Shown here: positions 773-63,567 of the stretch, one piece after another
How positions within the stretch are numbered: position 1 is the first letter of the stretch
Layout: every line of letters begins with the position of its first letter
Assembly (NCBI RefSeq): GCF_001194135.2
Contig: NC_068996.1
Span: 49,888,309-49,952,041 of the forward strand
DNA from: Octopus bimaculoides
Taxonomy: Eukaryota
DNA length: 63,733 nt
Direction: 5' to 3'
Translations under genes and position numbers: made by a program
The notes under the pieces: model-generated
The model's input: only the letters and a program-made list of their open reading frames with translations
What the model was told of the DNA's origin: nothing
The model's database searches: none

Positions 773-921
773 CATTGAAAAATACCTTAGGAATGAGAAC
801 CCAGGTTTGAAATTTCCCCAAGACACCTGAAGAAGGCTGGAGGGTATATCAGCCAAAACGTTGTGTTAACAACAAACAAGATGAGGACAAATATCCGTCA
901 AATGTAAATAATGTAAATAAT
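654..921 (+). mobile_element. tRNA-headed SINE with (AAT)n spacer and a hammerhead-like, Penelope-type 3' tail
   Basis: A box TGGCGTAGTGG (673-683), B box GTTCGATTCC (718-727), AAT repeat, hammerhead-like motif at 822-867, tail (AATGTAAAT)2. Confidence 0.75.
822..867 (+). ncRNA. Type I hammerhead ribozyme-like motif (G12 to A variant)
   Basis: Stem I GACAC/GTGTT; core CTGAAGA plus extra A; stem II GGCTG/CAGCC; AAAA instead of GAAA; stem III ACGT palindrome; GUU site. Confidence 0.7.
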
Positions 922-1189
922 AAAACAAGTTCTCAAAATGAAGTAAATAACATTCTATGAATTGGTAAAATTCTTGAGAACTCTTTATGAAACACTCACT
1001 TCCTGATAATTTTACCCCATACAGACCTAGAACTGCAGGGTTGGGTATCTCAGCAAAGACCTAGAAGAGGAGTTTAATACTGGCTGTCTATGGGAACTCC
1101 CTATATATTGATAGTTTGGCTTTTAAAATTGAATCTATAGGAGAATTAGAAAAGAAATTCTAGGTTTCACAGCTAAACCTAGAATTGAG

Positions 1190-2410
1190 AGGTCTTATGG
1201 TAAACAATGTAATGTATGCAAGAGTGGTTAGGTGTGTGTTTGTTAGTGTAAAGTGAAATGATATTGTTTAGACAGATGTCACAAATACGTTTCTCCAATA
1301 TGTAAGTGTCAATAGAAGTGACGTTTAAAAGAGGAAATAAAATTTTTTTAGTGATGGTCAAATGGCCAGTGGCAAGGAAGTGGATCCAAGGTGCATAGAA
1401 GTGTTGTGGATGTAAAGGTTCAGGAGCAAAAGAAAAATCAAGGCTGGATGAAGAGTTACAGATCAGAAGGGTATGCAAAGTAGGGACTTGGTTGAAAGAA
1501 GGGAATGGATATTCATAGAATATGGGAGAGGTGACAGGATCTAAGTGAAGTATCTACTTCACTAGGAAGTGTGCTGGATGGGCTATTGAAAGGATAAGAT
1601 ATTAAGGGTGGAAAGTGAAGGGAAGAGCAGATGGTGGTGGGGTGGAGCAAGATGTGAGCATGGAAATGCAACAAATGTTCCAGGTGTGGAGGCAGGTATT
1701 ATTGACAATAATCTGGGGGTAACAGTGATGCGTTAACTGGAGGGCCGTCAGGTGTGTCTAGATCTTGAAGTAATGATCATGGTTACAGAGACAGCAAATG
1801 CATAGAAACTGTGAACATGGGATGGGGGTGGGAAAAGGTGAAGTCAGTTGACTTATAGGTGTAGAGTAGAGAGGGAGAGATTTGGATAGTTAACAGTGAT
1901 AGTGATGTCGAAGAAATTGAAAGAGGATGGGTTGGTGGTAGAAGCAAAATCAATGATTAACTGAAAGGAATAAATGAAGTTGATGAAGGTGGTGAGTTGA
2001 GTATGAACAAGAGAGCTGGCCCCGGTGCAACCATCGATAAATGTACCATACAGTTCAGGGATGGACCAGTTAAGTAGATAAATATTTGAGCCTCAACATA
2101 AGCAACAAACAAGATAGCATAGGTAGTTTGCATGGTCACCTCAGTGACCTACTAGTAAAATTTACAGTAGAATGAGAACTAATTCAAAGGAGGAGCGTAG
2201 AGGTGCTGGGATCCAAGAAGTACTTAGGAGCAAGAGGACTATCATCTTGTAGGATGTCAGTATATAGGGATTTAATATCTAGAGCAAAGAAGGAGAGAGG
2301 AGCTAGGTGAGGAAGAAGAGGAATTGAACAGAAGAATGTAATTAGCATTATAAATGTGAGAAGTGCAGTAATCAATGGTTGGAGAATCCTTTTGAAGTTT
2401 CATTCATTTT
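1190..2410 (-). mobile_element. Decayed Penelope-like retroelement (RT plus GIY-YIG endonuclease remnants)
   Basis: Frameshifted peptides ALDIKSLYTDI, PSTSTLL, YAILFVAYVEAQIF, PELYGTFIDGCTG (YIDD-type motif) and LHIGET (GIY-YIG second motif) occur in the expected order. Confidence 0.8.
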
Positions 2411-2589
2411 CAGCACTTCCAGTTATGACTAGGAAACCTATAATGAACAGAAAGGGGTTGAAGACAGAGCCATAATAAATCCCACTAAATTCATTATAAG
2501 CTATCACCTTACTGGTTGCTCCTCAATACATAGCTGGTATAACTCTCTCCAACTCATTCATCTACCTTTAGCTTTCTTTGTGACCACTA

Positions 2590-2790
2590 AATAACAAAGC
2601 AAGGATCCTTTCAAAGACATTTTCCAGATCTACAAACGCTAGGTATAGTTTACTTCTAGTTAAGTACTTCTCTTGCAGTCATCTCATGAGGAAGATGGCA
2701 CCAGTGGTACCTCTTCCTGGCACAAGACCAAACAGCATCTTATCTAGATTAATCTTGTTCCTAATCAGTTTTGCAATAAATTGTAAGTAT
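2590..2790 (-). mobile_element. RTE-type LINE reverse transcriptase fragment
   Basis: LFGLVPGRGTTGAIFLMR*LQEKYLTRSKLYLAFVDLENVFERI matches the QFGF..GRGTTDAIF..RQLQEK..LYLAFVDLEKAFD motif. Confidence 0.85.
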
Positions 2791-3120
2791 ATCATCATCA
2801 TTTAATGCCTCTTCTCCATGCTAGCATAGGTTGGATAGTCTGACAGGATCTGCACAGGCAACAATTGTCTGTTTTGTTATGGTTTCAACAGCAGGATGCC
2901 CTTCCTAATGCCATTCTTGAAAAGTAGTATGGGATTTCTCACAGATCAATACATCTGTCAATTGCACACATAGATGTGTAACAAAATGGTCTGACACTGC
3001 TATAAGACAATACATTCTTGAGCAAACAAATAACCATTCAATGCAAATGATTGTAACATAACATGAGCAATACTTCTATTCTTATTTTTTTTACTATCAA
3101 TATATATCTATATATATATA

Positions 3121-3160
3121 TAGTCTGACGAATGGGAATGTGAAACTCTGAGTAATAGAT
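3121..3160 (+). ncRNA. Degenerate type I hammerhead-like motif
   Basis: CTGACGA (3125-3131), GAAA (3142-3145), near-palindromic stem III ACTC-T-GAGT, GUA site. Stems I and II are weak. Confidence 0.45.
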
Positions 3161-3574
3161 TTTGTGATGTCTTTGCAGCTTTATTAATAAAGCATATGGC
3201 TCTACTTCTGGTATTCAAGTACTATTTATGTGCTCACTCTAGTATGTATGTATATATATATATGAGGGAAGATCATTATCAGAAATGTTCTGAGTTCAAA
3301 TCTCACCAATGCTGACTTATCCCACTTCTAGGTTTGATAAAATTAATTCCAGGCAAGTACCAGGACTAGGATATTTAACTGTCCTCAGAACACATCAAAG
3401 AAATCCCTAGGACTTGAACCTCAGATCACAGAAAGGTGAAACCTCTGGCAATTTATCTGAATAAGTGCATGCATGGATAAATAGTAATAATACACATATG
3501 TATGTTTAAGGAGTTTTTGCTTTGCAACCAAATGAATTCAATTTTGGTCACACAGGATATTTTTCACGTGATCG

Positions 3575-3915
3575 ATGTCAGAACCGTCTGACTCATGCTC
3601 GTGCTGGTGGCATGTTAGAAGCACCATCCAAACATGGCCGATTCCAGTACCCACTGACTGGTTCTCCTGCAGGTGGCATGTAAAAAGCACTATCCGAATG
3701 TGATCAATGCCAGGCCCGCCTAATTGGCCCTCGTGTTGGTGGCATGTAAAAAGTACCCACTACACTCTCGGAGTGGTTGGCATTAGGAAGGACATCCAGC
3801 TGTAGAAACTCTGCCAGATCAGATTGGAGACTGGTGCAGCGGTTGGTTCTCCAGACCTCAGTCAAACCGTCCAACCCATGCCAGAATGGAAAAACAGATG
3901 TTAAATGATGATGAT
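3575..3915 (+). mobile_element. RTE-LINE 3' UTR family copy (GATGATGAT tail)
   Basis: Family motif GGAAGGGCATCCAGCTGTAGAAACT...CCAACCCATGC.AGCATGGAAA.CGGACGTTAAA(TGA)n. Other copies near 200-520, 8050-8225, 9885-10207, 10510-10625, 14850-15030, 41826-42135, 45630-45870 and 55150-55340. Confidence 0.8.
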
Positions 3916-5155
3916 CATCATGATGGTGGTGGTGGTGGTGGGCAGATATCTTTCACTAGAGCAGACCAACCAAAAGCCATGTCAGTGGAACTAGTAGGCA
4001 GAAACAGAAAGAAGCCTATTGTATGTACGCATTCATGAATGCATACATACATACATACTAGGCATGTGCCATCAGTAATTACTGAGGGTAGGTAGTTGTG
4101 ACCTTTATGTAATAAAACATACAAAAAATAAGCGAAACAAACACAGGTGCACGACTGCCTTTATAGGTGTTGTAGGAATGTACGCAGCATGAATACTACA
4201 GCAATCCTATGCATAGCTTAAATACTAAGATTGAAAGGCAGGGGCGAATTATGCCTACGTAATCTATGAAAAAATAAAATATTTTGCATTTTATGCATAG
4301 TAATCAGAGTAACCTTCATAATTCTATTGAATTAGGTGCATATTTTGCCATAAAAGGTAAATGTTACTATCGATCTATTTCATTCAGGTTAGGCACTGCC
4401 TACCTTGTCTATCTAGGCAGCACGTCCCTGATACATACATACACACACGTATGGTACTAACATAATTGTTTGTTTTAGGAGTTTTTGGTTCACAACCACA
4501 TGGATTCAATTCCAATCTCACTGAGTGATACTTAGAGCAAGTACCTTTTACTAAAGACCTTGGCCAACCAATGCCATGTGAGTGGATTCGATAGACAGAA
4601 ACAGAAAAGTGTATAATGTATGTGTGTGTATGCACATCTGTGTGTGTGTGTGTGTGTTCATGTCTCTTTGTTTTGACACAGCATGTTAATTGTAAACAAA
4701 GATCATCGTCACAAAAGTATTGTTGTTCATTTGAGATCATCCGTGAAAATATGCACAGTCATTGTACTCTTCATGTTCGAATAACAAGAAAATATTACTT
4801 TACTAGGAAATAGGGCAAAGTTGGCAACCCAAAAAGCATCTGGCCTTAGAAAACCTGCCACAATTAATTTTATCTGACCCAAGGAAAGTATTAAAATGGT
4901 GATGATAATTTCTAAAACTGAATGTTTCTTTCTAGTAATGCATGGAGAGTTATTGTCACAGAAATTATTTATCTATCTAGCTATTCCTACATGTAGCTAA
5001 GACTCACACACACACAATAGAATACAAATGAGAGTGGCAGGAGCAGTTAAGCCAACAATTTATCATGCTCTCTCTCTCTCCCTCCCTCTCTCTCTCTCAA
5101 TCTATCTCTTTACTACTTTCTCATGTATTCTTGCGTCATTACTATCTGGACACAC

Positions 5156-5205
<50 letters not shown>

Positions 5206-5907
5206 CTACCCCTCTCTCTATTAACACACACACACACACATAAATACTATTTACTGTTTACTTGTTTCAGTCATTTGGCTGTGGCCATGCTGGGGCATTA
5301 CCTTGAAGTTTAGTCAAACAAATCGGCCCCCAAAACTTATTTTTTAAGCCTAGTACTTGTTCTATTGGTTACTTTTAGCTGAACTGCTAGGTTACAGGGG
5401 TTTAAACACACCAACACTGATTGTCAAGCAGTGGTAGGGGACAAACACAGACATAAAGATACACACACATAGATATATAAATAAATATATATATATATAA
5501 ACCTAAATATATATAAACACACACACACCCACATATATATATATATATATACACACACATACATACATGTTGAAACAAATCCATTCACAAGGATTTGGTT
5601 GACCCAAGGTTATAGTAGAAGACACTCACCCAAGGTGCCATGCAGTGGGACTGAACCTGAGACCATGTGGTTGGTAAGCAAGCTTCTTACTATACAGCCA
5701 TGCCTGTGCCTATATCATTATCATCATTTAATGTCCACTTTCCATGCTAGTATGGGTGGATGGTTTGACTGAAAATTGGTGAGCTGCACCAGGTACCAGT
5801 CTGATTGAGCATGGTTTCTATGGTTGGTTCCTTATGCCAACTACTCCAAGAGTGTAGCAGGGGAGGGCTAGCTTAGCTATTTCTCTGTAGAGTGAGAAAA
5901 TGATGAA

Positions 5908-5955
5908 CAGCTTTAATCGATTTTCAAACCTTATTGGATTCTCATCAGAGGAGAC
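5908..5955 (-). ncRNA. Degenerate type I hammerhead-like motif, sense to the kibra transcript
   Basis: CTGATGA (5948-5942), decayed stem II GAATCC/GGTTT, GAAA, palindromic stem III AATCGATT, UUA site. Stem I is poor. Confidence 0.5.
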
Positions 5956-6587
5956 TACATCAATTTGACCCATCCCAGAGAAACAAACAGCTAATCTGTT
6001 TGTAGACTCAACAATTAGACAGTAGCTACAGAAAACTGGTGCCCCTCATTTGCATACCAAATGTATTAAATCATCACAGGCACAAACACTTTTAGTTACA
6101 TTGCTTGATACGTCAATCAACCATTTTCTCTCCCTCTCTGTTTACCAGTCTGTCATGTGCTCCTTCAGTCTTAGTCACATACTTACACACACACACACAC
6201 CCCTCATCTTTCCCTCCACACTTCCCTATATATTAATCAATTTATCTATCTCTGTGTGTGTGTGTGTATACACACACAAGCATATATGTGCATGTGTATG
6301 TCCAAGTCCACACCAAGCCACACACAAACCACTACATCAAGTCTTTCTCCCTCTAAACATCAGCTACCTGGAAGCTCCTACCTGTTCATGTTTTCCTGCA
6401 AGTGTCAACATGCAGTAGTGAAAGTGGAACATTGCCAAGGGCAGTTTGACTGCCTTTGGATGCTCTAGATGCAACATTTATACACATACACATTCATGTG
6501 TATATAACATATAAATGCATCATCATTTAATGTCCGTTTTCTGTGGGTTAGGTGGTGTGTATGTGTCTGTATGCCATGGGTTGGGTG

Positions 6588-6635
<48 letters not shown>

Positions 6636-6709
6636 TTGTTATAAGATCATAAGCCAGAAAAAGAGTATACCCTAAAATAAATAGATATATATAAATATAC
6701 ATACATTTA

Positions 6710-6781
<72 letters not shown>

Positions 6782-8801
6782 CACACACACATATATATAT
6801 AAATATATATAGTGAAGGCGCATGGTTCAGTAGTTAGAACACTGAGCTCACAATCATGATGTTGCAAGTTCGAATCCCGGACAGGGCTGTGTGTTGTGTT
6901 CTTGAGCAAGACACTTTATTTCACGTTGCTCCAGTTCACTCAGCTGTAGAAATGAGTTGCAAGATTACTGGTGCCAAGTTGTATCGGCCCTTTTGCTTTT
7001 CTCTTGGATAACATCGGTGGTGGGGAAAGGGAAGGCTGGTGTGCATGGGCAACTGTTGGTCTTCCATAAACAACCTTGACCAGACTTGTGCCTTGGAAGG
7101 GAACTTTCTAGGTGCAATCCCATGGTCATTTATAACCAAAGTGGGTCTTTACTTCTCTTTTACATACTGTTGCCACAATTATTATTTATCAGAGCTTAAT
7201 GGCAATATTTCATTAAATCCAAAAGGGTGAAAAAGCAGGGTTTGAACTGAGAATTTACATAGAATATATAGCATGAAACCAAGAAAACAAACAAAAAATA
7301 AAAAAAGAAAACACAATAAACATATTCACCACTATTATTGACAGAACGGGTACACTGGTATGTGTGTATCACGGTATCAAAAAATTGACCAGGCTATCAT
7401 ATGATGTTATACAATGCTGATCACAATGCGCTTGCATCATTTTAGCTTTTGAATGACACCACCTCACTGGTTAGGCGAGCAAACTAACATTTCCCCTGAT
7501 AGAAAGGCTATTCCATCACAGGAGTACCCTTTTATACCCCTTTACAACTAAGTTGACTAGAACAACATGCCACCCAATCCAGAAAATGAACCCACTAGGC
7601 CACATACCTATCACACACGCACACATTCCAGAAGGTGACAAGTTCTAAAGAAACTATGCCGCACTACTTAGCATACAGTACTCAAGAGTAAGTCTGAGAG
7701 TGAATAAAATATTTAATCCTAAGTCATTTGTCTGAAAAAATATATTCTGTTGGAATGATTATGGCTTATATATATATATATATATNNNNNNNNNNNNNNN
7801 NNNNNNNNNNNNNNNNNNNNNNNNNNNNNNNNNNNNNNNNNNNNNNNNNNNNNNNNNNNNNNNNNNNNNNNNNNNNNNNNNNNNNNNNNNNNNNNNNNNN
7901 NNNNNNNNNNNNNNNNNNNNNNNNNNTGTTTGCATGTGTGTGTGTGTGTCACACTCTAATCTTTCATCATCCAGCACAGGATCACCTCCTCCAATGCCAC
8001 ATCCCCTCTCAAAAGATCTTTTTCTTGAAAGTGACCTTGCCAGTGCTGGGACCACATAAAAAGCACTCAGTCCACTCTATGGGGTGGTTGGTGTTAGGAA
8101 GGGCAACCAGCTGTAAAAACCCTGCCAAAACAGGCAGTGAAGCATGGTGCAGTCTTTTGCCTTGCTAGCTCTTGTCAAACTGCCCAACCCATGCCAGCAT
8201 GGAAAGCAGATGTGAAATGATGATGTATGTATGTAAACAAGAGATATGAAAACACATCATTTGGTGAAACAGACCAATATTTTCCAAAACTCAAACACAA
8301 ACATGAATTGTTCTTATGGAAAATTTTGAACATCCATTTCACATAACAAAATAAGTTACTGAACTGAGGCATGGTATGAATGGTTAAGAAATTCATTTCA
8401 CAATCTTATTATTCCAGGTTTTATTCCCTTAGCACCATCTGAGTGACAGAGCTGTGTGGAAAAAACTGTTTGTTGTACACGTGTGTCTGTGTCTGTCTTT
8501 TAATAATGTAGATCAGTGATGGATATAAACATCAGTGAGAAAAACAAAAAAACTAGTATTTCCCAAACAAAATTCATTGAGATATATTTGTTCCGCATTA
8601 AGGTACAGACACTTCCTTGTCATATTCAGCATCAGAAATACACAGAGTTGAATGCTTATTGTCCAGCAATCTCCATATACAACTTATATATATATATATA
8701 TTTATTATTATTATTTTGCTTAAGAAGAGCAATACTAATAACCAACTGTTAGAACTCGATATACATAAGAATCAAGTATCAGTTGAGTATAGACCAGTAA
8801 T

Positions 8802-9101
8802 GTGGAGGCGCAATGGCCCAGTGGTTAGGGCAGCGGACTCACGGTCGGAGGATTGCGGTTTCGATTCCCAGACCGGGCTTGTGTGTATTTATTGAGCAAA
8901 AACACCTAAAGCTCCACGAGGCTCCAGCAGGGGGTGGTGACGACCCCTGTTGTACTCTTTCGCCCCAACTTTCTCTCACTCTTTCTTCCTGTTTCTTGAG
9001 TAACGCTGCGATGGTCTAGTGTCCCATCCAGCTGGGGGGAACACCTACGCCATAGAAACTGGGCCCATGAGCCTGGCTAGGCTTTGAAAGGGCGACGTTT
9101 T
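8802..9101 (+). mobile_element. Full-length tRNA-derived SINE with 14-bp TSD
   Basis: A box TGGCCCAGTGG, B box GGTTTCGATTCC. TSD TATAGACCAGTAAT at 8788-8801 and 9102-9115. Confidence 0.9.
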
Positions 9102-9880: not shown

Positions 9881-11496
9881 CTTTACCAGCATTGCCTTAC
9901 TGGCACGTTAGAAAATCATTTGAGCGAGGTCATTGCCAGTGCCGCTGGACTGGCTCCTGTGCAGGTGGCACATAAAATACACCATTTTGAGCATGGCCAT
10001 TGCCAGTACCGCCTGACTGGCCTTCGTGCCGGTGGCACGTAAAAGCACCCACTACACTCTCGGAGTAGTTGGCATTAGGAAGGGCATCCAGCTGTAGAAA
10101 CTCTGACAGATCAGATTGGAGCCTGGTGCAGCCATCTGGTTCACCAGTCCGCAGTCAAATCGTCCAACCCATGCTAGCATGGGAAGCGGACGTTAAACGA
10201 TGAACGATGTGAGCAAACTGTTACACTTGTCACAAATTAATTTGTAATATGAACATGGTCAACAATCAGTCAAAGTTTCTGCTTGAACTGCAAAAGCGCA
10301 CCCAGGCAGCCTTCGACAATCACAAGACAAATTGGGGTCTCAGAATGAAACTTATTTTTCCTATATGTTCTATAATGCCTTTATCACTGGTTCATTTAAC
10401 ATGGCTTTTTTTTTTTTAAACCAAACACCAGTAATAAATGAAGATAGATGTACTTTAGCCCAGATTAGTTGCTGGCCCTCAAAACAAAAATGCAAAAGTG
10501 AAACTCATTTTAGAATGCTACTTTCTTGCCAGATCAGACTGGAGCCTGGTTCAGCCTCCTGGCGTGCCAGTCCTCAGTCAAACCATCCAACCCATGTCAG
10601 CATGGAAAGCGGAAGTTAAACAACAATGATAATGAGGACTTTCATATCTGGTTTAATGAAACTGGTAACACACACAGACACATACATCCACTAGAAGGCT
10701 TTGTTAACAAAGACTCAGTGATTAACAAGCTATTGGTATTCATTTTTTTCTAATTCTCCTACCACTACTACATGGCTCCTGTGTCAATGTACTGGCTAGC
10801 CATTTGTGTTAATATCTCCACCCAACTCTCACGCGCACTGACCAACCTTATTTTGACTCCCTCCCAAACTGCATTTTATACTTTTTCCGATTCTTCCTAT
10901 CTGGAACTGCTGAACAGCGCTAACCACGACATTATCAACAGACTAGGAAGAGCCACAAAGGTCATGGTACTGTTCCTTACTTATATTAAGCTTTTTAAAA
11001 AAATTACAGTTTACATCCCCTCCCCTTCTGAATGAGCATCTGGCACGAAAATATTGCAAAGATTAATAGTATACAAATCAATAATAATAATAATAACAAC
11101 AATAATAACAGTAATAATACATATCACACATCAATTGTTTCAACCTCACTTTGTCAATGAAAATTACACATTTGGGAGCACCCAAAAAAGTCCATGGGTC
11201 TTTTGCTCTCAAACCAGATAAAACAAATAAAGAAAAGCCTATTTTAGAGTCAATCATCTCTGAATAATTTCTGTAATGATCTGCCAAATCAAGACGAGGA
11301 ACTGTAAAAAAATTCTCATGTTTGACAGGTAAACAGTTCTTAAAACCATTTATCATATTTCAAGAAAATTATGCATTAGGAAAATTATTCCAGTGTAACT
11401 GCAAATTCAGACAAACATTGAAATTTACAGAATTATATATAAGTGGTCTTTGCAATAAATAACACTTTGATTAAAAATCATGTGAAATATACTTAC

Positions 11497-12838: not shown

Positions 12839-13200
12839 TAAAGATTGTTTGCCAACATAACATGGAAGTCCTGGTTTAGGACTAATGTTGCTGTAATTTA
12901 GCCCCAGGAGACGCCGTCTCTAGCTGGCTATACGACATGATCTGTGTCCTTATATTTTTGAACAAGGGAATCCTCACTTAGCTCAAAACAATATCTGTGT
13001 ATCGTGATGAAGGGAAATAACCCAGAAATCGCAATACACAGATATTGTTTTGAGCTGAGTGGGGGTGCTAGATTCCCTTGTTTAAAAATATAAGGACACA
13101 GATCGTATTGTATAGCCAGCTGGAGACAATGTCTCCTGGGGCTAAATTACAGCAATATTTGTGCTAAACCAGGTCTGTCCTGTTATGTTAGCAATCTTTA
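12839..13200. mobile_element. Fold-back/MITE-like element with long inverted arms in kibra intron 3
   Basis: Arms from TAAAGATTG...GATATTGTTTTGAGC pair over about 160 bp around a short core. The element is nested in a SINE. Confidence 0.85.
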
Positions 13201-13209
13201 CTCCAGGGT

Positions 13210-13470
13210 TGATTTGTTGGACTAAACTTTTAAGGTAGTGCTCCAGCATGGCCACAGTTCAATGACTAAAACAAGTAAAAGATAAAAGATATACTGGGAT
13301 TGTTTCGTTCAACTAAAACCCTTCAAGGTTGTGCCTCAGCATGGCCACAGTGCAATGACTGAAACAAGATAAAAGATATACTAGGATTGATTTGTTCAAC
13401 TAAAACCCTTCAAGGTGATGCCCCAGCATGGCCACAGTCCAATGACTGAAACAAGAAACAGATAAAAGAT
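13210..13470 (+). repeat. Tandem array of a 93-bp SINE-3'-end unit
   Basis: Three units with periods 93 and 87 bp. The same unit and GATATACTGGGATT junction recur near 50700-50880, 51470-51720 and 60550-61290. Confidence 0.85.
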
Positions 13471-14700: not shown

Positions 14701-14735
14701 TACATGATGAAGGCTGTGAAACAGCTGTAATCCTA
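14701..14735 (+). ncRNA. Highly degenerate hammerhead-like remnant
   Basis: (A)TGATGA-A-GGCTGT-GAAA, palindromic ACAGCTGT, GUA site. C3 lost and stems I/II collapsed. Confidence 0.35.
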
Positions 14736-19335: not shown

Positions 19336-19612
19336 TCATCATCATCATCATCATCATCATTGTTTAACGTCCGCTTTCCATGCTAGCATGGGTTGGACAA
19401 TTTGACTGAGGACTGGTGAAACCGGATGGCAACACCAGGCTCCAATCTAATTTGGCAGAGTTTCTACAGCTGGATGCCCTTCCTAACGCCAACCACTCAG
19501 AGAGTGTAGTAGGTGCTTTTACGTGTCACCAGCACGAAAACGGCCACGCTCGAAATGGTGTCTTTTACGTGCCAGCTGCACAAGAGCCAGTCCAGGGGCA
19601 CTGGCAACGATC
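19336..19612 (-). mobile_element. Young RTE-LINE 3' UTR copy
   Basis: (CAT)n tail, near-identical to the copies at 27571-27791 and 56302-56484. Confidence 0.85.
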
Positions 19613-46395: not shown

Positions 46396-46933
46396 AGTGT
46401 ATGGTAGTGGGAGCAGTGCCTGCAGAAGCAATGGCATTAGTAGCAGTGGTGGAGGGGTGGTGATGTGACACCTTTACTGCGTATCTAATTTTGATTGGGT
46501 TTCTTTGAAGTTTACCAATTTTTTTTACAGAAACTTTACTAAAAATGTTTTCCCCTAAAAAAAAAAAAAAAAAAATATTTTAATAAATCTAAATATTTGA
46601 TTCCAGTTCAGAAAATTAGCAGATTTACAAATATGAGTGACACTTAATAAAAGAAATATAAATTAAGAACAACAGCCACAAGCATGGTTGAGTGGTGAAG
46701 AAGACTGCTTCTAAACCAAGTAGGTACAGTGCAATGGGTATGTCTTCAACAATAGTCCCATGCCTACTAATGCTTTGTGAGTGAATTTGCTAGATGGAAA
46801 CTGTGCAAAAGCCTGTCATGTGTGTGCATTTGCATATGTATGTATGTATGTATGTATGTAAAAATTTGAAATGATAAAACATTAAAAAGACATACTAAAA
46901 TGCCACAAAAATATTACAAAGATTTAAAAGTTC

Positions 46934-47016
46934 CATCTATGGGCCATTTCAGAGACGTGCCAAGTAATATGATATATTTCATATTTTTAAAAATTGACAT
47001 TCCCCTCATCAGGATG
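46934..47016 (-). ncRNA. Type I hammerhead-like motif with complete core
   Basis: Stem I CATC/GATG; CTGATGA; stem II GGGGA/TCTCT with a long loop; GAAA; stem III ATGG-C-CCAT; AUA site. Confidence 0.7.
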
Positions 47017-47822
47017 TTTACACATAATGCAAAAAATAATGCATACCACTCACTTGCAGTGACTGGTATGTAATTGTATAATTTACATTTCTGTATNNNN
47101 NNNNNNNNNNNNNNNNNNNNNNNNNNNNNNNNNNNNNNNNNNNNNNNNNAGATGGAACTTTTAAATCTTTGTAATATTTTTGTGGCATTTTAGTACGTCT
47201 TTTTAATGTTTTATCCTATCAAATTTTTATTACACCAGTGTATTGTAACTTAAATTAAAAATTCACTGTGTTTTATGTATTATATCGATATTTATCCATT
47301 TATATTTGTATATATTTATATATTTTTATATTTATATATTTGGAATTTTTATATCGATTTTATTAACGTAGAAGAATATACATATATATTGGATTTTGTG
47401 TGTAGTTACTAATTATGTTCCTCTAGTTTCTGATTGCATTGCCTCCATTGAGATTATTAAACAGAATATAGCTCAATTGGAGCACTACAACTCCAGTCTG
47501 TATTTTATTTGCGAGTAATGTTAATATTAGCAATCTCAAAATAAAGCAATGTATTTTGTATGTATGTATGTACATATGTATGTATGTATGTATGCTCATG
47601 TCTGTGTATGCATCTTTGCACTTGGTGTTTGTCTCCTCTTACACTATTTGATAAGCAATGTTCATTTGTTTACATTCTCATAACTTAACAGTTCAACAAA
47701 CAAAAGCTAAATGGATAGAATAAAACCAGGTTTTAAAATATGCATCTATACTGAGGGTCGATTTGATAATCTAAACCCTTCAATGCATTTCTCCAGTACA
47801 ATCACAGTTCTATGACTGGAAC

Positions 47823-51319: not shown

Positions 51320-52422
51320 AAATGTATGTGTGCATGTGTGACTTTTGTGTCTGTCTTTGTCCCATCCACTACTTGGCAACCAGTGTTGGTTTGTTTACAT
51401 ATCCATAACTTAGAAGTTCAGCAAAAGAAAACCCATAAAAGAAGTTACAGACTATAAAACAAAATAAGTACTGGGACGGATTTGTTCAACTAAAATCCTT
51501 CAAGGTGGTGCCCCAGCATGGTCACAGTCCATTGAGTGAAACAAGTAAAAGATAAAAGATATACTGGGATTGNNNNNNNNNNNNNNNNNNNNNNNNNNNN
51601 NNNNNNNNNNNNNNNNNNNNNNNNNNNNNNNNNNNNNNNNNNNNNNNNNNNNNNNNNNNNNNNNNNNNNNNNGCATGGCCACAGTCCAATGAGTGAAACA
51701 AGTAAAAGATAAAAGATATCTGTTTGTCTCTTCTTTTACTTGTTTCAGTCATTAGACTATGGCCATGCTGGGGCACAGCCTAGAAGAATTTTTGTCAAAG
51801 AAATTGACTCACTTTTTATTTTTTTTAAAGCTGAACCACTAAGTTACAGGGATGTACACACACCAACACCTGTTGACAAGCTGTACTGGAAAGAAACAAA
51901 CACACACGTACACACAACAGGATTCTCTCTGTGTTTGTCTACCAGATCCACTCACAAGGTTTTGGTTGGCCTGAGGCTATAGTATAAGACACATACCAAA
52001 GGTACCATACAGTAGGACTGAACCTAGAACTATGTGATTAAAAAACTAGCTTCTTATCATATAGTCACGCCTGCCCCTATAAACATGATGTTTTTTTTAA
52101 TAGCCAGAAAAATTATAAGTTCCAGTAACAATTCATCCTAAGAACTGAGTGTATTTTTTAAAAACCCCAACAAAGAGAAAACTGAAATGGAACGGAGAGA
52201 TATATCATCTGTAATGGTTCTACAATGATCTTATAAATGGTAAAATTTTAAGACACGTCTTTCTAAATACCTAAAAGTTTTTATGAATGTAAAACGTAAA
52301 CATCACTTAATAAAATGCTTATTTCTAGAAATGCTACTTATTAATGGATTTTCCCTCTTTTTTCTTTTAATTGTTGATCCTTTAATTATTTATTTATTTT
52401 ATTATTATTAATATTATTATTA

Positions 52423-52514: not shown

Positions 52515-54060
52515 ATTATTATTATCTTTTGATTTCTAAGTCTTAATGCATTTTCTTTCCAAAGATAAAGAATATTTTTCAAAAGGTTTTTTGCCTGGTT
52601 AAGTATACAGTTTGTTTGTTTTGTCACTGATTTTTTTTCTTTAATCTTTTCTTTTTTTTTATATTCTTTTTTTTTTTAGTGAGTCTTTTTCTCTTTTTGC
52701 TTCTTTCATTTATCTTTCTTCTTCTTCTTCTTCTTCTTCTTCTCCTCCTTCTCCTTCTTCTTCTTCTTCTCTCCTCCTCCTCCTCCTCCTCCTTTGTTGT
52801 TCTCATACAAAAATTAATGCTACTTAAACTAAACCATTTTAATTAAACAGTGATTTATTAAAATCCATTAATGGGACATCATACTGATAATAATATCTAT
52901 CAGTTTCTAAGAATGGAATGTTGTTGGTTTAATTTTCTTTTCGTTTTTCTTTCTTTCTTTATTTCTTTCTTTCTTTTTCTCCACACACCTCGCACCTCCC
53001 CTCCTTATGTAGATACCAACATTCTTTACTGTAGAACTCTTTTTGCTTGCTACTCGGTTACATTACCGATATCAGCCATAATTTCAATGATAAAAATGTA
53101 CACATTTGAAAAGTTCAGTGCAGGTTTTCATATTCATTTTGTTTGGCTGCAGTTCTTCACTGTTACTTGGAGATAAGAAGGAAGACAGACACCATATTTC
53201 TATTTCAAGGGGTGGAGAATTATAGGGCACCACTTATTGCATGTAACAATCAAATATCATTTTATGTGCTAAAATCTTTTTTTTTTAAATCAAAAATAAG
53301 AAGAAAAAAGACAGGAAATAAATATATAAACGAAAATAAACATGCAACATTTTAGTGATTGCTCGAAAAGCAAAACTAGTTCGTCAAGTGGGAACAGTAA
53401 ATGAGAGCATAATTAAGTTTGGGTGTAAAGGCGGCAAACTAGCAGAATCATTACCGTTCCAGACAAAATGCTTAGCTGCATTTCTTCCAACTCTTTATGT
53501 TCAGTGTTCAAATTCCAACAGGGACGACTTTACCTTCCATCCTTTTGGGGAATGACAGAAATAAGTACTATAGGTGCAGGAGTGACTGTGTGGTAAGTAG
53601 CTTGCTTACCAACCACATGGTTCAGGGTTCAATCCCACTGCGTGGCACCTTGGGCAAGTGTCTTCTACTATAGCCTTGGGTCAACCAATGTCTAGTGAGT
53701 GGATTTGGTACATGGAAACTGAAAGAAGCCCGTCGTATATATGTATATATATATGTGTATGTGTATGTGTATGTTTGTGTTGGTCCCCCTAGCATTGCTT
53801 GACACCAGGTGGTGGTGTGTTTACGTCCCCGTAACTTAGCGGTTTGGCAAAAAGAGACTGATAGAATAAGTACTAGGCTTACAAAGATTAAGTCCTAGGA
53901 TCGATTTGTTTGGCTAAAGGTGGTGCTCCAGCATGGCCGCAGTCAAATGACTGAAACAAGTAAAAGAGTAAAAGAGTGGAGTGGAGAACTTATGGGAAAT
54001 GCTGTAATTGATTTTTCCCCACCCCCTCAAAACTGCTGGCCTTGGGCCAAAATTTGAAAC

Positions 54061-54119
<59 letters not shown>

Positions 54120-55143
54120 GNNNNNNNNNNNNNNNNNNNNNNNNNNNNNNNNNNNNNNNNNNNNNNNNNNNNNNNNNNNNNNNNNNNNNNNNNNNNNNNN
54201 NNNNNNNNNNNNNNNNNNNNNNNNNNNNNNNNNNNNNNNNNNNNNNNNNNNNNNNNNNNNNNNNNNNNNNNNNNNNNNNNNNNNNNNNNNNNNNNNNNNN
54301 NNNNNNNNNNNNNNNNNNNNNNNNNNNNNNNNNNNNNNNNNNNNNNNNNNNNNNNNNNNNNNNNNNNNNNNNNNNNNNNNNNNNNNNNNNNNNNNNNNNN
54401 NNNNNNNNNNNNNNNNNNNNNNNNNNNNNNNNNNNNNNNNNNNNNNNNNNNNNNNNNNNNNNNNNNNNNNNNNNNNNNNNNNNNNNNNNNNNNNNNNNNN
54501 NNNNNNNNNNNNNNNNNNNNNNNNNNNNNNNNNNNNNNNNNNNNNNNNNNNNNNNNNNNNNNNNNNNNNNNNNNATCCACATACCTATAATCAAGGAGGT
54601 AAGCTGTCAGAATAGTGAATGCATTGGACAAATGGTTCAGCAGCATTTCTTCCAATTCCTTACATTCTAAGTTCAAATGCCACCAGGATTGGCTTTGCCT
54701 CCCTTTAAACCTGTTGGCACTCTGCCAAGATTTGAAGAAATAATTAAGTTCGTGCATAAAACTATAGAGATTTGAAATGGCTCCAGTTTGGGGTTGAGAA
54801 ATAATAGAATTTGGAATTGCCATAGAAAAGTTCCAATTTGGAATTGCTATGAAGAGACTTTACCATTATGTTTTTATATTTTATTTTCTGCTTGTTTCAG
54901 TTACTGGACTATGGTCATACTGGAGCATTTCCTTAAAGGGTGTAGTCAAACAAATCAATCCAAGAACTTTGTTTTTTCTTTTTTTCTTTTGAAAGTCTAG
55001 TACTTAATCTGTCAGTGTCTTTTGCTGAACTGCTAAGTTATGGAGATGTAAACAAACCAACACTGGTTGTCAAGTGGTGGGGGGTCAGGAAGGGATAGAG
55101 GTGCCAACAGAAGCACAAAGACATGCACACATAGATATATATA

Positions 55144-56301: not shown

Positions 56302-56928
56302 CATCATCATCATCATCATCATCGTTTAACGTCCGCTTTCCATGCTAGCATGGGTTGGACGATTTGACTGAGGACTGGTGAAACCGGATGGCAACACCAG
56401 GCTCCAGTCTGATTTGGCAGAGTTTCTACAGCTGGATGCCCTTCCTAACGCCAACCACTCAGAGAGTGTAGTGGGTGCTTTTACNNNNNNNNNNNNNNNN
56501 NNNNNNNNNNNNNNNNNNNNNNNNNNNNNNNNNNNNNNNNNNNNNNNNNNNNNNNNNNNNNNNNNNNNNNNNNNNNNNNNNNNNNNNNNNNNNNNNNNNN
56601 NNNNNNNNNNNNNNNNNNNNNNNNNNNNNNNNNNNNNNNNNNNNNNNNNNNNNNNNNNNNNNNNNNNNNNNNNNNNNNNNNNNNNNNNNNNNNNNNNNNN
56701 NNNNNNNNNNNNNNNNNNNNNNNNNNNNNNNNNNNNNNNNNNNNNNNNNNNNNNNNNNNNNNNNNNNNNNNNNNNNNNNNNNNNNNNNNNNNNNNNNNNN
56801 NNNNNCACCACCTCAGCCCAGGTCTTCCTGGGCCTACCTCTTCCACGGGTTCCCTCAACTGTTAGGGTGTGGCACTTTTTCACGCAGCTATCCTCATCCA
56901 TTCTCACCACATGTCCATACCAGCGCAC
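56302..56928 (-). mobile_element. 5'-truncated RTE LINE inserted in a SINE
   Basis: ORF end VRWYGHVVRMDEDSCVKKCHTLTVEGTRGRGRPRKTWAEVV, then a gap, then the common 3' UTR with (CAT)n tail. The host SINE resumes at TGAGTTCAAATTC. Confidence 0.88.
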
Positions 56929-60323: not shown

Positions 60324-60515
60324 GCATTGTGGCTAATCAATGTTCTGTCCTCTTCTTATTTGTCCACATCTCACCTGTGTATAAGAACACATGTAGTGTG
60401 TTCTATTGAATAGTCTGACATGTATGGCATTGTCTAGCTTGGTTTTGAACAAATCCTTTATGGAGTTAAATACCTTACATCCTGCCCTTATTCTCTTTGA
60501 GATTTGAGCATCCAT
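59543..60515 (-). mobile_element. Decayed RTE-LINE fragment split by the right arm of the inverted duplication
   Basis: AQISKRIRAGCKVFNSIKDLFKTKLD...NAM (60515-60324) continues as MERSIL...EHIWNEIIQEQSRVNNVIEEY...RW (59909-59700). Confidence 0.75.
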
Positions 60516-63484
60516 ATCTCAGTGCATATTCATATATACGCATGTATCTTTTTCTTCTTATTTGTTTCAATCACTGGATTGTGGCCATGCTGGGGCACCA
60601 CCTTGAAGGGTTTTAGTTGAACAAATCAATCCCAGTATATCTTTTATCTTTTACTTGTTTCAGTCATTGCACTGTGGCCATGCTGGGANNNNNNNNNNNN
60701 NNNNNNNNNNNNNNNNNNNNNNNNNNNNNNNNNNNNNNNNNNNNNNNNNNNNNNNNNNNNNNNNNNNNNNNNNNNNNNNNNNNNNNNNNNNNNNNNNNNN
60801 NNNNNNNNNNNNNNNNNNNNNNNNNNNNNNNNNNNNNNNNNNNNNNNNNNNNNNNNNNNNNNNNNNNNNNNNNNNNNNNNNNNNNNNNNNNNNNNNNNNN
60901 NNNNNNNNNNNNNNNNNNNNNNNNNNNNNNNNNNNNNNNNNNNNNNNNNNNNNNNNNNNNNNNNNNNNNNNNNNNNNNNNNNNNNNNNNNNNNNNNNNNN
61001 NNNNNNNNNNNNNNNNNNNNNNNNNNNNNNNNNNNNNNNNNNNNNNNNNNNNNNNNNNNNNNNNNNNNNNNNNNNNNNNNNNNNNNNNNNNNNNNNNNNN
61101 NNNCAGTATATCTTTTATCTTTTACTTCTTTCAGTCATTGCACTGTGGCCATGCTGGTGCACCACCTTGAAGGGTTTTAGTTGAACAAATCAATCCCAGT
61201 ATATCTTTTATCTTTTACTTGTTTCAGTCATTGCACTGTGGCCATGCTGGGACACCACCTTGAAGGGTTTTAGTTGAACCAATCAACCCTAGGACTTGTT
61301 TTTCTTAAGCCTAGTACTTATTCTCTTGGTCACTTTTGCCAAACTACTATGATACAGTGATGTAAACAAACCAACACCAGCTGTCAAGTGGTCGTGGTAG
61401 TAGGTACAAACACACACACACACACACATCATATACAATGGATTTCTTTTAGTTGTCTACCAAATCCATTCACAAGGCTTTGCTCAGCCTGAAGCTATAG
61501 TAGAAGACATTTGCCCAAGGTGCCATGCAGTGGGACTGAACCTGGAACCATCTGGTTTGGAAACAAGCTTCTTACCACACAGTCGCACCTATACCTATGA
61601 TATATGATAAACTTTCAAATAACTCTTCTCTTATGGTCAGACATGTAATATGGCTAGTTCTTCAAACCAAAAACATGGACCATCTATGGGTTCTCACACA
61701 ATTTTTGCCGATTCAATTTTGCTCACTAAACTTGGGTTGGCACCAAGGTTTTAGTAGAAGACACTGGCCCAAGATGCTGCACCGAGGAACAATAAATAGA
61801 GACAACAAATGGTAAAAAGTAACGACCGGGCTTAATTAAATAGGCACTTGGTTTGGTTGATATGGACTGACTTAAAACCCCTCAAAGGTGATGTTCCAGC
61901 ATGGCCGCAGCCCAATGATATAAATAAAACCCAGTAAAAACAATGAAAGAATATTGTGTTTAATAGAGATGCAGTTATTAAAATGAGAGAACTGAAGTGG
62001 ACCATTCACTGGTTTGTCCTATTGCTGAGAGGTTAGCAGGAAACTTACAAGTACAGGATATGCATTATTGAAACCAGAGCAGAAAGAAGTCATCACATCC
62101 ATGGAGAGGAAAAAAAACAACAAAACAAAACAAAAAACAAAAAACAAAAACGAAACAGAACAAAAACCCACAAAAAAGAAAGAAAAAGAAAACAAATATA
62201 TTTGGTTTTCACCCACCCTATTACCACCACCACCACTGCTACTATTACTACCACCACCACCACCACCACCACAACCACCACAGCCACCACAATCACAGCG
62301 ACCACCACCGAAACCACCAGTGCAACCATCACTACCACCACCGAAACCACCACCGCAACAGNNNNNNNNNNNNNNNNNNNNNNNNNNNNNNNNNNNNNNN
62401 NNNNNNNNNNNNNNNNNNNNNNNNNNNNNNNNNNNNNNNNNNNNNNNNNNNNNNNNNNNNNNNNNNNNNNNNNNNNNNNNNNNNNNNNNNNNNNNNNNNN
62501 NNNNNNNNNNNNNNNNNNNNNNNNNNNNNNNNNNNNNNNNNNNNAACACAGCTACTTCCACCACTACATACTTCTCCACCACCATTATCTTGCCTATGAA
62601 AGCCACTAATACCACCACCAGTGCCATCGCCGCCGCAACCGTCTCTTTTACTTTCACCACTCCTGCTTCTACCACCACCATCACCACTTCTTAATATTTC
62701 CATATTTCCTTATCCTCTTTACTAAAGTAACCTGTAATTTTAAAACAACAACTTCTAAGAAATATTTTTGTTGTTGTTAAAATGTTTAAAGTGAGCGATG
62801 CCATCATTAGAATTAACCGTATACTTTATTCATGCTTTTTAACTAACCGCATCTATGGTACTGGTTAGATATGTTTTAAGAGTGCAGTAAAAGAGTGTGG
62901 ACACATCTGTGTGGTTAACAAGAATTCGTTTTACAACCACATGGTTTTGCGTTCATTCTCACGCTGTATACCCTGAATTTAATCAAAAGTTTCGTGAGGG
63001 AAATTCAGTGAATTTTCTTCTGTTATGATTCCATTCATATTTAGGATGCATTAAACCGACTTCGAAATGTGATTAATGCTATATTTCATCAATGCCAGAA
63101 AGATGAAAGAAAGATGAAAGTTGAATTTGACAGTGTTTGACAGCCTATATCTAAATAATAAAAGGTATTCTGTCTGGTGCTTAACAACCTAGTTAGGTGC
63201 AGGCTACAACATGTAATGTGGTTCCAGGTTTAACCCTACTAAGCAGAGCTTCAGGTATATACTGTTATGAACTCAGATTGAATTTATACAAGCATTAAAA
63301 AAAAGACAGTAAAATAAGGTCAGGCATGGCTGTGAGGGTAAGAAGTTTGCTTCCTAGCAAAGTAGTCTTGGGTTCAATCCCACTGCAAGCCATAGTCTTG
63401 TGAATGGATTTGGTAGATGGAAACTGTAAGAAGCTTGTCGTTTATATATAGAGAGCAGTCACCATATTTCATTCCATAATGGCT

Positions 63485-63567
63485 ATCTCTGATGAGCACA
63501 TGATTACATAATCAGACTGTCACTTAACACTCTGTTGAAACCCTAGTGTGAAACCAATTGGTAAGAT
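63485..63567 (+). ncRNA. Type I hammerhead-like motif with complete core
   Basis: Stem I ATCT/AGAT; CTGATGA (63489-63495); stem II GCAC/GTGT with a long loop; GAAA (63550-63553); perfect palindrome ACCAATTGGT; GUA site. Confidence 0.75.

What the first reader, a model, noticed from the sequence alone, without database searches (positions are those of the whole stretch)
822..63567. Eight hammerhead-like motifs with different stems in 64 kb, all with self-complementary stem III
Seen: motifs at 822(+), 3125(+), 5908(-), 14705(+), 28104(-), 28273(-), 46934(-) and 63485(+). Stem III reads ACGT, ACTC-T-GAGT, AATCGATT, ACAGCTGT, ACGT, ACATATGT, ATGG-C-CCAT and ACCAATTGGT, each directly after the GAAA position and followed by H17. 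Stems differ while the architecture is kept, which argues for several ribozyme-bearing repeat families rather than chance. Palindromic stem III is the known signature of dimer-cleaving, PLE/retrozyme-associated type I hammerheads. Inference: about one per 8 kb would imply a large, diverse, probably under-annotated ribozyme-repeat complement in this genome.
Basis: partly seen in the sequence, partly recalled or inferred. Interest (0 to 1): 0.85.

Follow-up and report, generated by a model that had tools for sequence, protein, structure and literature searches.

The report
Dispersed relic hammerhead ribozymes, retroelement type
Six of the eight flagged sites are real hammerhead self-cleaving-RNA sequences of the small, pair-forming kind already known to ride on Penelope-like retroelements in animal genomes; several are mutated relics and two sites may be chance, so this is a correct but ordinary finding.

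Summary

- **Intact cores (4):** 3125(+), 5948(-), 47012(-) and 63489(+) carry both invariant boxes (CUGANGA and GAAA). Each has an 8-10 nt self-complementary helix III and a helix II of at least 3 bp. I expect 0.005 such hits from dinucleotide shuffles and 0.016 from 3,779 decoy box permutations. The reversed window gives none.
- **One-substitution copies (2):** 827(+) has G12>A at a CpG, and 28135(-) has A6>U. Both otherwise match the published minimal hammerhead of Penelope-like elements. Two are observed against about 0.03 expected.
- **Unsupported by motif (2):** 14704(+) and 28273-28363(-) cannot be separated from chance.

No Rfam hammerhead model detects any site tested. Flanks are not shared between sites. 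I found no tandem copies and no reverse transcriptase or GIY-YIG remnant. One locus (47012) has an inverted second copy running into a gap. Seven of eight motifs lie within 100 nt of a microsatellite.

Best reading: dispersed solo relics of ribozymes from Penelope-like elements or retrozymes, which act as dimers. This class has been known since 2014. The genome-wide extrapolation cannot be tested here.

The parts
822..867 (+). Type I hammerhead relic. Layout: helix I GACAC/GUGUU (5 bp), CUGAAGA, unpaired A, helix II GGCUGG/UCAGCC (6 bp, G10.1-C11.1), AAA in place of GAA (G12>A, a CpG>CpA change), helix III ACGU, then U17.
   Evidence: The minimum-free-energy fold is exactly helix I plus helix II. 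It matches the min-HHR hallmarks of PMC4209133.
3123..3156 (+). Hammerhead motif with an intact core. Layout: CUGACGA, weak helix II AUG/UGU (3 bp including 2 G.U), GAAA, helix III ACUC-U-GAGU, then A17. Helix I is only 2 bp. It sits directly 3' of a (TA)n microsatellite.
5913..5949 (-). Hammerhead motif with an intact core. Layout: CUGAUGA, helix II GAAUC/GGUUU (5 bp including 2 G.U), GAAA, helix III AAUCGAUU, then A17. Helix I is only 1 bp.
28104..28140 (-). Type I hammerhead relic. Layout: helix I UCUUU/AAAGA (5 bp), CUGUUGA (A6>U), unpaired A, helix II GAGC-GUA-GCUC (G10.1-C11.1), GAAA, helix III ACGU, then C17.
46934..47016 (-). Type I hammerhead with an intact core and a long branched helix II. 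Layout: helix I CAUC/GAUG, CUGAUGA, helix II GGGGA...UCUCU closing a structured 45-nt insert, GAAA, helix III AUGG-C-CCAU, then A17.
   Evidence: The extended helix II appears in the predicted dimer fold.
63485..63567 (+). Type I hammerhead with an intact core and a long helix II. Layout: helix I AUCU/AGAU, CUGAUGA, helix II GCAC...GUGU closing a 46-nt insert, GAAA, helix III ACCAAUUGGU, then A17.
   Evidence: The fold shows helix II plus an ACC-AAUU-GGU hairpin, and the dimer fold shows a 10-bp intermolecular helix III.
28273..28363 (-). Doubtful, possibly a decayed copy. Layout: CUGACAA (G8>A), helix II of 3 bp around a 49-nt insert, GAAA, ACAUAUGU, A17, and a helix I of 8 bp of which 4 are G.U.
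   Evidence: About 0.17 chance hits are expected in this class. It lies 220 nt from the 28135 motif and 55 nt upstream of a (TA)n microsatellite.
14704..14729 (+). Doubtful. AUGAUGA (C3>A), with only 7 nt before GAAA and so no helix II, then ACAGCUGU and A17. GCUGU-GAA-ACAGC can simply form a hairpin.
   Evidence: It was not recovered by any stem-requiring descriptor.
46859..46938 (-). The 80-nt 3' tail of the 47012 hammerhead, running from A17 to a (TATG/CATA)n microsatellite. It forms one arm of an inverted repeat.
47150..47229 (+). Second arm of the inverted repeat, 96% complementary to the first. It starts at the first base after gap 47097-47149 with A-GAUGGAAC..., which is the sequence from A17 onward. 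The rest of an inverted second hammerhead copy is therefore probably hidden in the gap.

Best explanation
The window is a stretch of a bilaterian animal genome with introns and upstream region of a KIBRA/WWC-like gene, strong CpG depletion and many SINEs and microsatellites. It carries at least four, and probably six, dispersed single copies of type I hammerhead ribozyme sequences. They are of the minimal, dimer-forming kind carried by Penelope-like retroelements (in their pseudo-LTRs) and by the retrozymes derived from them.

**Inferred mechanism, from established hammerhead biochemistry and the cited papers.** When the element is transcribed, helix I and helix II form within one molecule. 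Helix III is too short to be stable alone, but it is self-complementary. Two copies therefore pair helix III with helix III, either in a tandem transcript or between molecules. This builds two complete catalytic cores, and each cuts 3' of position 17, releasing unit-length element RNA.

**Shown here.**
- The sequence architecture is present.
- Its occurrence is far above chance.
- Helices I and II are predicted for 827 and 28135.
- A 10-bp intermolecular helix III is predicted for 63489.
- There is an inverted second copy at 47012.
- The motifs are associated with microsatellites.

**Inferred.** Retroelement origin, the dimer mode of action, and present-day inactivity.

The copies look old and solo. 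Two have lost an invariant catalytic base (G12>A at a CpG, and A6>U). Three of the four intact ones have U in place of C at 11.1, the other product of decay at that same CpG. Most are therefore probably relics rather than working ribozymes.
For: **Statistics.**
- Exact-core hits with a palindrome of at least 8 and helix II of at least 3: 4 observed against 0.005 in 1,000 dinucleotide shuffles and 0.016 across the decoy box permutations on the real sequence, where the true descriptor ranks first.
- Three-helix descriptor with at most one core mismatch: 4 observed against 0.03 (shuffles) and 0.04 (decoys). The two one-mismatch hits alone are 2 against 0.03-0.04.
- The reversed window gives 0 for these strict descriptors.

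**Match to the published class.** Sites 827 and 28135 show the features that PMC4209133 lists as emerging beyond its descriptor: an unpaired nucleotide after A9, a G10.1-C11.1 pair, a 4-5 bp helix I and a palindromic helix III.

**CpG decay.** CpG observed/expected is 0.32 and TpG+CpA is 1.29. This fits decay of the C11.1-G12 CpG to UG in three copies and to CA in site 827.

**Folding.** The minimum-free-energy fold of 827 is exactly helix I plus helix II. The 63489 dimer uses the 10-nt palindrome.

**Locus 47012.** An 80-nt inverted duplicate at 96% starts at A17, abuts an assembly gap and ends at a microsatellite. This matches the inverted 5'-truncated copies, the assembly problems and the microsatellite target bias described for Penelope-like elements (PMC8557442).

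**Microsatellites.** One lies within 100 nt of 5 of the 6 supported motifs (P=0.006) and of 7 of all 8 (P=0.0006), against 27% of random intervals.
Against: - No Rfam hammerhead family matches any site tested, even in 151-161-nt or 3-kb searches at E<=10.
- No reverse transcriptase or GIY-YIG remnant was found by Pfam in the flanks.
- There are no tandem or same-family copies in the window, so neither family structure nor covariation could be shown.
- Helix I is only 1-2 bp in 3125 and 5948, and helix II of 3125 is three weak pairs.
- Folding energies are no better than shuffles (z from -0.1 to -1.1), and the 47012 monomer prefers another fold.
- Published min-HHRs themselves cleave poorly in vitro.
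- The stem and palindrome thresholds, and the 100-nt microsatellite cut-off, were chosen after I had seen the data.
Confidence: 0.75

Rival explanations
1. All eight motifs are chance matches to a loose pattern in AT-rich, microsatellite-rich DNA.
For: With one core mismatch and no stem requirement there are 47 hits in the window. CUGANGA-N7..17-GAAA alone is not enriched: 4 observed against 1.8 expected, P=0.11. Rfam finds nothing. Folding energies are unremarkable.
Against: The strict descriptors give 4-5 hits against 0.005-0.4 expected in shuffles and decoys, and 0 in the reversed window. Among 3,780 box combinations, the true one comes first on every palindrome or stem count. Chance remains plausible only for 14704 and 28273-28363.
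Confidence: 0.03
2. They are working host ribozymes under selection, for example intronic hammerheads that act on the KIBRA-like pre-mRNA, as HH9 and HH10 do in amniote introns, rather than retroelement debris.
For: 5948(-) and 28135(-) lie in the sense orientation downstream of the KIBRA-like exons at 35604-35732 and 30815-30922. Four cores are intact.
Against: There is no match to the HH9 or HH10 models or to any other Rfam hammerhead. Both strands and intergenic positions are used. Two copies carry lethal core changes. The stems are weak, there are no loop-loop tertiary motifs, and the copies sit next to microsatellites and one inverted duplicate, which is typical of insertions.
Confidence: 0.05
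3. The two long motifs (47012 and 63489) are box C/D small nucleolar RNAs. CUGAUGA contains box C, and there is a short terminal stem.
For: There are sub-threshold hits to several C/D snoRNA families over exactly these two motifs: 12-17 bits at E of 1-7 against gathering scores of 38-70. In 47012 a CUGA lies near the 3' side.
Against: The scores are far below threshold. Site 63489 has no CUGA box D. In 47012 the would-be box D lies 11 nt from the terminal stem instead of next to it. The snoRNA reading does not explain GAAA followed by a 9-10-nt palindrome and a non-G. The same architecture also occurs in the four short motifs, which cannot be snoRNAs.
Confidence: 0.03
4. They derive from tandem non-LTR retrozymes (small circular-RNA-forming repeats) rather than from pseudo-LTRs of autonomous Penelope-like elements.
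For: Animal type I hammerheads with a palindromic helix III are reported mainly in retrozymes (PMC7229834 abstract). Retrozymes are proposed to be non-autonomous derivatives of pseudo-LTRs of Penelope-like elements (bioRxiv 10.64898/2026.07.22.740005). No reverse transcriptase or endonuclease remnants flank the motifs. Sites 28135 and 28355 lie 220 nt apart on one strand.
Against: No tandem array or repeated unit contains any motif. The 28135 and 28355 units share no similarity beyond their overlap and (TA)n. The two origins are related, and one window cannot separate them.
Confidence: 0.25

Closest known systems
Minimal hammerheads (min-HHR) of metazoan Penelope-like elements (Cervera & de la Pena 2014, PMC4209133)
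   Same: Type I topology, CUGANGA and GAAA boxes, and a short palindromic helix III that implies dimers. Helix I is 4-5 bp. Sites 827 and 28135 have the unpaired nucleotide after A9 and the G10.1-C11.1 pair. The copies are mostly solo and highly variable. Pairs in opposite orientation occur close together, as at 47012.
   Different: No pseudo-LTR or reverse transcriptase / GIY-YIG context was found. Three copies have G.U and one has A-U at 10.1-11.1. Four copies have an 8-10-nt helix III rather than the minimal 2-4 nt. Two copies have a helix II enclosing about 45 nt, against 6-8 bp in the published families. Family-level covariation was not shown.
Canonical metazoan type I hammerheads and non-LTR retrozymes (Schistosoma, newt satellite, Cervera & de la Pena 2020, PMC7229834)
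   Same: Helix III forms as 2-3 bp capped by a 3-4-nt palindromic loop: ACC-AAUU-GGU, AA-UCGA-UU, AUG-GCC-CAU and ACU-CUG-AGU. A dimeric active form is expected.
   Different: There are no tandem repeat units and no recognisable loop 1 / loop 2 tertiary contacts. There is no hit to Rfam Hammerhead_1, whose seed sequences, to my recollection, include such canonical type I hammerheads.
'HHR_half_core' cases in Naiad-type Penelope-like elements (Craig et al. 2021, PMC8557442)
   Same: The two halves of the catalytic core are separated by tens of nucleotides (35-50 nt in the paper, 54-55 nt here). The location is near a 3' end, next to (TA)n-type microsatellites.
   Different: In this window the two halves are framed by clear helices I, II and III. 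No Naiad open reading frame was found nearby. The link is a lead from the paper's methods text, not a tested homology.

Membership tests
Hammerhead ribozyme (core definition) | Box C3-U4-G5-A6-N7-G8-A9 | tested here: met
   Exact in 827, 3125, 5948, 47012 and 63489. Not met in 28135 (A6>U), 14704 (C3>A) or 28355 (G8>A).
Hammerhead ribozyme (core definition) | G12-A13-A14, then the A15.1-U16.1 pair, then a non-G at position 17 | tested here: met
   Met in 7 of 8 sites. Site 827 has A12. Position 17 is U, A, A, A, C, A, A, A across the eight sites.
Hammerhead ribozyme (core definition) | Three helices (I, II, III) radiating from the core | tested here: inconclusive
   All three are present in 827, 28135, 47012 and 63489, with helix I of 4-5 bp and helix II of 4-6 bp. 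Helix I is only 2 bp in 3125 and 1 bp in 5948. There is no helix II in 14704.
Hammerhead ribozyme (core definition) | Site-specific self-cleavage 3' of position 17 | not testable with these tools
   This needs in vitro transcription of monomeric and dimeric constructs.
Min-HHR of Penelope-like elements (PMC4209133) | Unpaired nucleotide between A9 and 10.1, and a G10.1-C11.1 pair | tested here: inconclusive
   Both features are present in 827 and 28135. The pair is G.U with no bulge in 5948, 47012 and 63489, and A-U in 3125. G.U is consistent with CpG decay.
Min-HHR of Penelope-like elements (PMC4209133) | Palindromic 15.2-16.2 / loop 3, allowing a dimeric helix III | tested here: met
   All eight sites qualify: 4 nt in 827 and 28135, and 8-10 nt in the others. 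A dimer duplex is predicted for 63489.
Min-HHR of Penelope-like elements (PMC4209133) | Location in the pseudo-LTR of an element encoding reverse transcriptase plus GIY-YIG endonuclease | tested here: not met
   Pfam gave no reverse transcriptase or GIY-YIG hit on open reading frames of at least 90 aa, on six-frame fragments of 1-3900, or on same-strand fragments 3.5 kb upstream of the other four motifs. Sensitivity for decayed genes is low, and the paper states that most copies are solo.
Min-HHR of Penelope-like elements (PMC4209133) | Genome-wide consensus families with compensatory changes | not testable with these tools
   The source genome is not in the searchable collections. Only one extra, partial copy was seen in the window.
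Rfam hammerhead families (no family of that name appeared in any output) | Covariance-model score at or above the gathering threshold | tested here: not met
   No hammerhead hit at gathering threshold. None at E<=10 in the whole window, a 3-kb stretch or four stretches of 151-161 nt.
Animal non-LTR retrozymes | Tandem repeat units (from memory, roughly 150-400 nt), each carrying a hammerhead | tested here: not met
   No tandem array or second copy contains any motif.
Box C/D snoRNA | Box C and box D adjacent to a terminal stem, plus a family-model score | tested here: not met
   Only sub-threshold hits of 12-17 bits against gathering scores of 38-70. Box D is absent in 63489 and misplaced in 47012.

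The most novel reading that the evidence does not exclude
This genome may hold an unusually dense and diverse population of dimer-type hammerheads. Extrapolating one selected window gives about one per 10-15 kb, which is tens of thousands or more per genome. The population would include a variant with a 45-nt structured insertion in helix II. That variant escapes both the Rfam models and the published min-HHR descriptors, and it could be the missing ribozyme of Penelope-like-element lineages reported to lack canonical hammerheads.
Probability: 0.2. Interest if true: 0.5.

Novelty: new member of a known kind. Interest (0 to 1): 0.3.

Why it matters
The result confirms that a reader working from sequence alone can spot real hammerhead cores that the curated Rfam models miss. 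It adds copies from an unidentified animal genome to a class known to be widespread in animals. The practical lesson concerns annotation. Dimer-type hammerheads with a palindromic helix III, decayed 10.1-11.1 pairs or long helix II inserts are invisible to standard covariance-model scans, so repeat and ribozyme censuses of invertebrate genomes probably undercount them. It does not reveal a new kind of ribozyme or mechanism.

Tried and rejected
- **Rfam.** I ran it at gathering threshold and at E<=10 on the whole window, a 3-kb stretch and four stretches of 151-161 nt. No hammerhead family was hit. The only matches were microsatellite-driven miRNA hits and sub-threshold snoRNA hits.
- **Simple core count.** CUGANGA-N7..17-GAAA is not enriched: 4 observed against 1.8 expected.
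- **Other topologies.** A search for type II/III topology gave 0 hits.
- **Shared flanks.** Self-BLAST of 600-nt flanks and pairwise local alignments showed SINE copies and microsatellites near the motifs, but no shared motif-bearing family.
- **Retroelement genes.** Pfam on long open reading frames and on six-frame fragments around the motifs found no reverse transcriptase or GIY-YIG domain. It found one WW exon and a weak RNase H-like hit at 40102-40512.
- **Source organism.** A SINE 38-mer had no match in the metagenome contigs. A transposase-like fragment hit many animal phyla. The KIBRA exons hit insects and vertebrates at 69-71%. The organism remains unidentified beyond bilaterian animal.
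- **Folding energies.** They do not discriminate the motifs from shuffles.
- **Alternative parse of 14704.** I considered helix II GGCUG/CAGCU followed by GUAA and AUCCU-A-AGGAU. It needs two core changes and a G at position 17, so I rejected it.

Full report
**Context.** The window has 63,733 bases, of which 61,139 are determined, at 36% G+C. It contains 11 N gaps, and five of them (51573-51672, 54121-54574, 56485-56805, 60689-61103 and 62362-62544) are not in the list attached to the finding. It is full of microsatellites and SINE-like repeats. CpG observed/expected is 0.32 and TpG+CpA is 1.29. On the minus strand it carries the first two coding exons of a KIBRA/WWC-like gene: Met plus WW1 at 35604-35732, and WW2 at 30815-30922. 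These are 69-71% identical to insect and vertebrate KIBRA. This is nuclear DNA of a bilaterian animal, and I could not identify the species.

**Gaps first.** None of the eight motifs contains or spans a gap. The closest gaps lie 85 nt upstream of the 47012 motif and 125 nt downstream of the 28135 motif. The gaps therefore matter only for the density estimate and for the inverted repeat described below.

**Checking the observation.** The cores differ in quality.

| Site | CUGANGA box | GAAA box | Other |
|---|---|---|---|
| 3125(+) | exact | exact | |
| 5948(-) | exact | exact | |
| 47012(-) | exact | exact | |
| 63489(+) | exact | exact | |
| 827(+) | exact | AAAA (G12>A) | |
| 28135(-) | CUGUUGA (A6>U) | exact | |
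| 14704(+) | AUGAUGA (C3>A) | exact | only 7 nt between boxes, so no helix II |
| 28273-28363(-) | none; best is CUGACAA (G8>A) 56 nt upstream | exact | |

If one core mismatch is allowed and no stems are required, the window holds 47 hits.

**Is it more than chance?** For four to six sites, clearly yes.
- Exact boxes plus a self-complementary stretch of at least 6 nt starting at A15.1 plus a non-G: 5 hits at 4 sites, against 0.43 in 1,000 dinucleotide shuffles.
- Palindrome of at least 8 and helix II of at least 3 bp: 4 observed against 0.005.
- On the real sequence, the decoys made by permuting the two boxes (3,779 besides the true pair) average 0.016. The true hammerhead boxes rank first. 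The only other decoy scoring above 1 is CNGAUGA/GAAA, which overlaps the true descriptor.
- A full three-helix descriptor allows an optional unpaired base after A9 and at most one core mismatch, and requires helix II and helix I of at least 4 bp each. It returns exactly 827, 28135, 47012 and 63489, against 0.03 in shuffles and 0.04 in decoys. The two one-mismatch hits alone are 2 against 0.03-0.04.
- The reversed, uncomplemented window gives zero for both strict descriptors.
- Sites 14704 and 28273-28363 are not separable from chance by motif. About 0.17 chance hits are expected in the class that includes 28355.

**Anatomy.**
- **827:** GACAC-CUGAAGA-a-GGCUGG[8 nt]UCAGCC-AAA-ACGU-U-GUGUU.
- **28135:** UCUUU-CUGUUGA-a-GAGC[GUA]GCUC-GAA-ACGU-C-AAAGA.

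Both show the features that Cervera and de la Pena list as emerging beyond their descriptor in hammerheads of Penelope-like elements. These are an unpaired nucleotide between 9 and 10.1, a G10.1-C11.1 pair, a 4-5 bp helix I and a palindromic helix III. The minimum-free-energy fold of 827 is exactly helix I plus helix II with an open core.

The four intact-core copies have longer helix III palindromes: ACUC-U-GAGU, AAUCGAUU, AUGG-C-CCAU and ACCAAUUGGU. As hairpins these are 2-3 bp capped by a 3-4-nt palindromic loop. That is the form described for canonical metazoan type I hammerheads, which need a second copy for an extended helix III. The predicted homodimer of 63489 uses the 10-nt palindrome as an intermolecular duplex.

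Sites 47012 and 63489 have 55 and 54 nt between the boxes. A 4-5 bp helix II closes this stretch, and the insert has further internal structure.

Three of the four intact copies have U at 11.1, and 827 has A at 12. In a genome this CpG-poor, both are the expected transition products of the C11.1-G12 CpG (inference).

**Surroundings.**
- The motif-bearing segments have no other copy in the window and share no flanks except microsatellites.
- There are no tandem arrays around them.
- No reverse transcriptase or GIY-YIG endonuclease remnant was detected nearby, though sensitivity for decayed genes is low.
- There is one informative exception. The 80 nt from A17 of the 47012 motif to a (CATA)n microsatellite (46938-46859) recur at 96% in inverted orientation at 47150-47229, starting at the first base after gap 47097-47149. 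An inverted second copy of this hammerhead-bearing element therefore very probably runs into the gap.
- Inverted 5'-truncated copies, assembly breaks at such structures, hammerheads near the 3' end and insertion into microsatellites are all described for Penelope-like elements (PMC8557442). Close pairs of min-HHRs on opposite strands are also reported (PMC4209133).
- A perfect microsatellite of at least 14 nt lies within 100 nt of 5 of the 6 supported motifs (P=0.006) and of 7 of all 8 (P=0.0006). The figure for random intervals is 27%. I chose the threshold after looking at the data.

**Comparison with known families.** No Rfam hammerhead model matches any site tested, even at E<=10 in stretches of 151-161 nt. 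Membership of those curated families is therefore not met. The motifs do meet the core definition of a hammerhead and, for 827 and 28135, the published hallmarks of the Penelope-like-element type. Weak sub-threshold C/D snoRNA hits over 47012 and 63489 arise because CUGAUGA contains box C, and the rest of a snoRNA is missing. No type II or type III hammerhead is present.

**Interpretation.** The best-supported reading is that these are dispersed solo copies, mostly relics, of the dimer-forming type I hammerheads of Penelope-like elements or their non-autonomous retrozyme derivatives. I put confidence at about 0.75 that they are genuine hammerhead-derived sequences, and lower that the carrier is specifically a Penelope-like element. 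Catalytic activity, the dimer mechanism and retroelement origin are inferred from the literature and were not shown here.

The local density is one per 10 kb overall and one per 15 kb for intact cores. The 2014 paper counts about 2,000-9,000 motifs per genome. This is a lead and not a result.

**Verdict.** The motifs are new members of a known kind, and interest is modest.

Noticed in passing
window 20327-20420: A 94-nt hairpin with a perfect 42-bp stem: -80.4 kcal/mol, z = -18.5 against shuffles. Rfam gives only sub-threshold miRNA-family hits there (mir-148, mir-128). It may be a foldback or MITE-like element, or a hairpin-RNA locus.
   Followed up: partly
window 12970-13066: A 97-nt near-perfect hairpin: -63.1 kcal/mol, z = -15.4. 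There is a sub-threshold mir-624 hit of 44.5 bits against a gathering score of 100.
   Followed up: partly
window 35604-35732 (-) and 30815-30922 (-): The first two coding exons of a KIBRA/WWC-like gene (start Met plus WW1, then WW2), 69-71% identical to insect and vertebrate KIBRA. Much of the window below 35.7 kb is therefore probably its introns.
   Followed up: partly
window 19347-19567, 27571-27791, 56309-56484, 10023-10203, 3731-3915, 45643-45777 and others: A SINE-like family of about 200 nt with at least 10 copies, each preceded by an (ATC)n-like run. The youngest copies are 98% identical. A second family has copies at 5576-5681, 14289-14394, 24413-24826, 45297-45618, 53569-53918 and 61300-61582. 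A 38-mer of the first family has no match in the metagenome contigs.
   Followed up: partly
window 40087-41425 (+): Open fragments of a transposase-like protein, 51-78% identical to 'hypothetical proteins' of a pseudoscorpion, moths, a fish, a spider and a leech, plus many metagenome fragments. The neighbouring fragment 40102-40512 gives a weak RNase H-like Pfam hit.
   Followed up: partly
window about 2500-2900: Short open fragments (...FGLVPGRGTTGAIFLMR and LQEKYL...LYLAFVDLENVFERI) that resemble, by eye and from memory only, a conserved reverse-transcriptase motif of LINE retrotransposons. Pfam did not report them at E<=0.01.
   Followed up: no
whole window: Strong CpG depletion (observed/expected 0.32) with an excess of TpG+CpA (1.29), while GpC is normal (1.03). 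This points to germline cytosine methylation.
   Followed up: partly
window 13205-13464 and 9919-10044: Tandem repeats with long units: 87 nt x 3.0 copies at 82% matches, and 67 nt x 1.9 copies at 81% matches.
   Followed up: no
window 63532-63563 (+): Inside helix II of the 63489 motif lies a second box, CUGUUGA, 11 nt before the same GAAA. This is the same A6>U variant box as in the 28135 motif. It may be coincidence.
   Followed up: no
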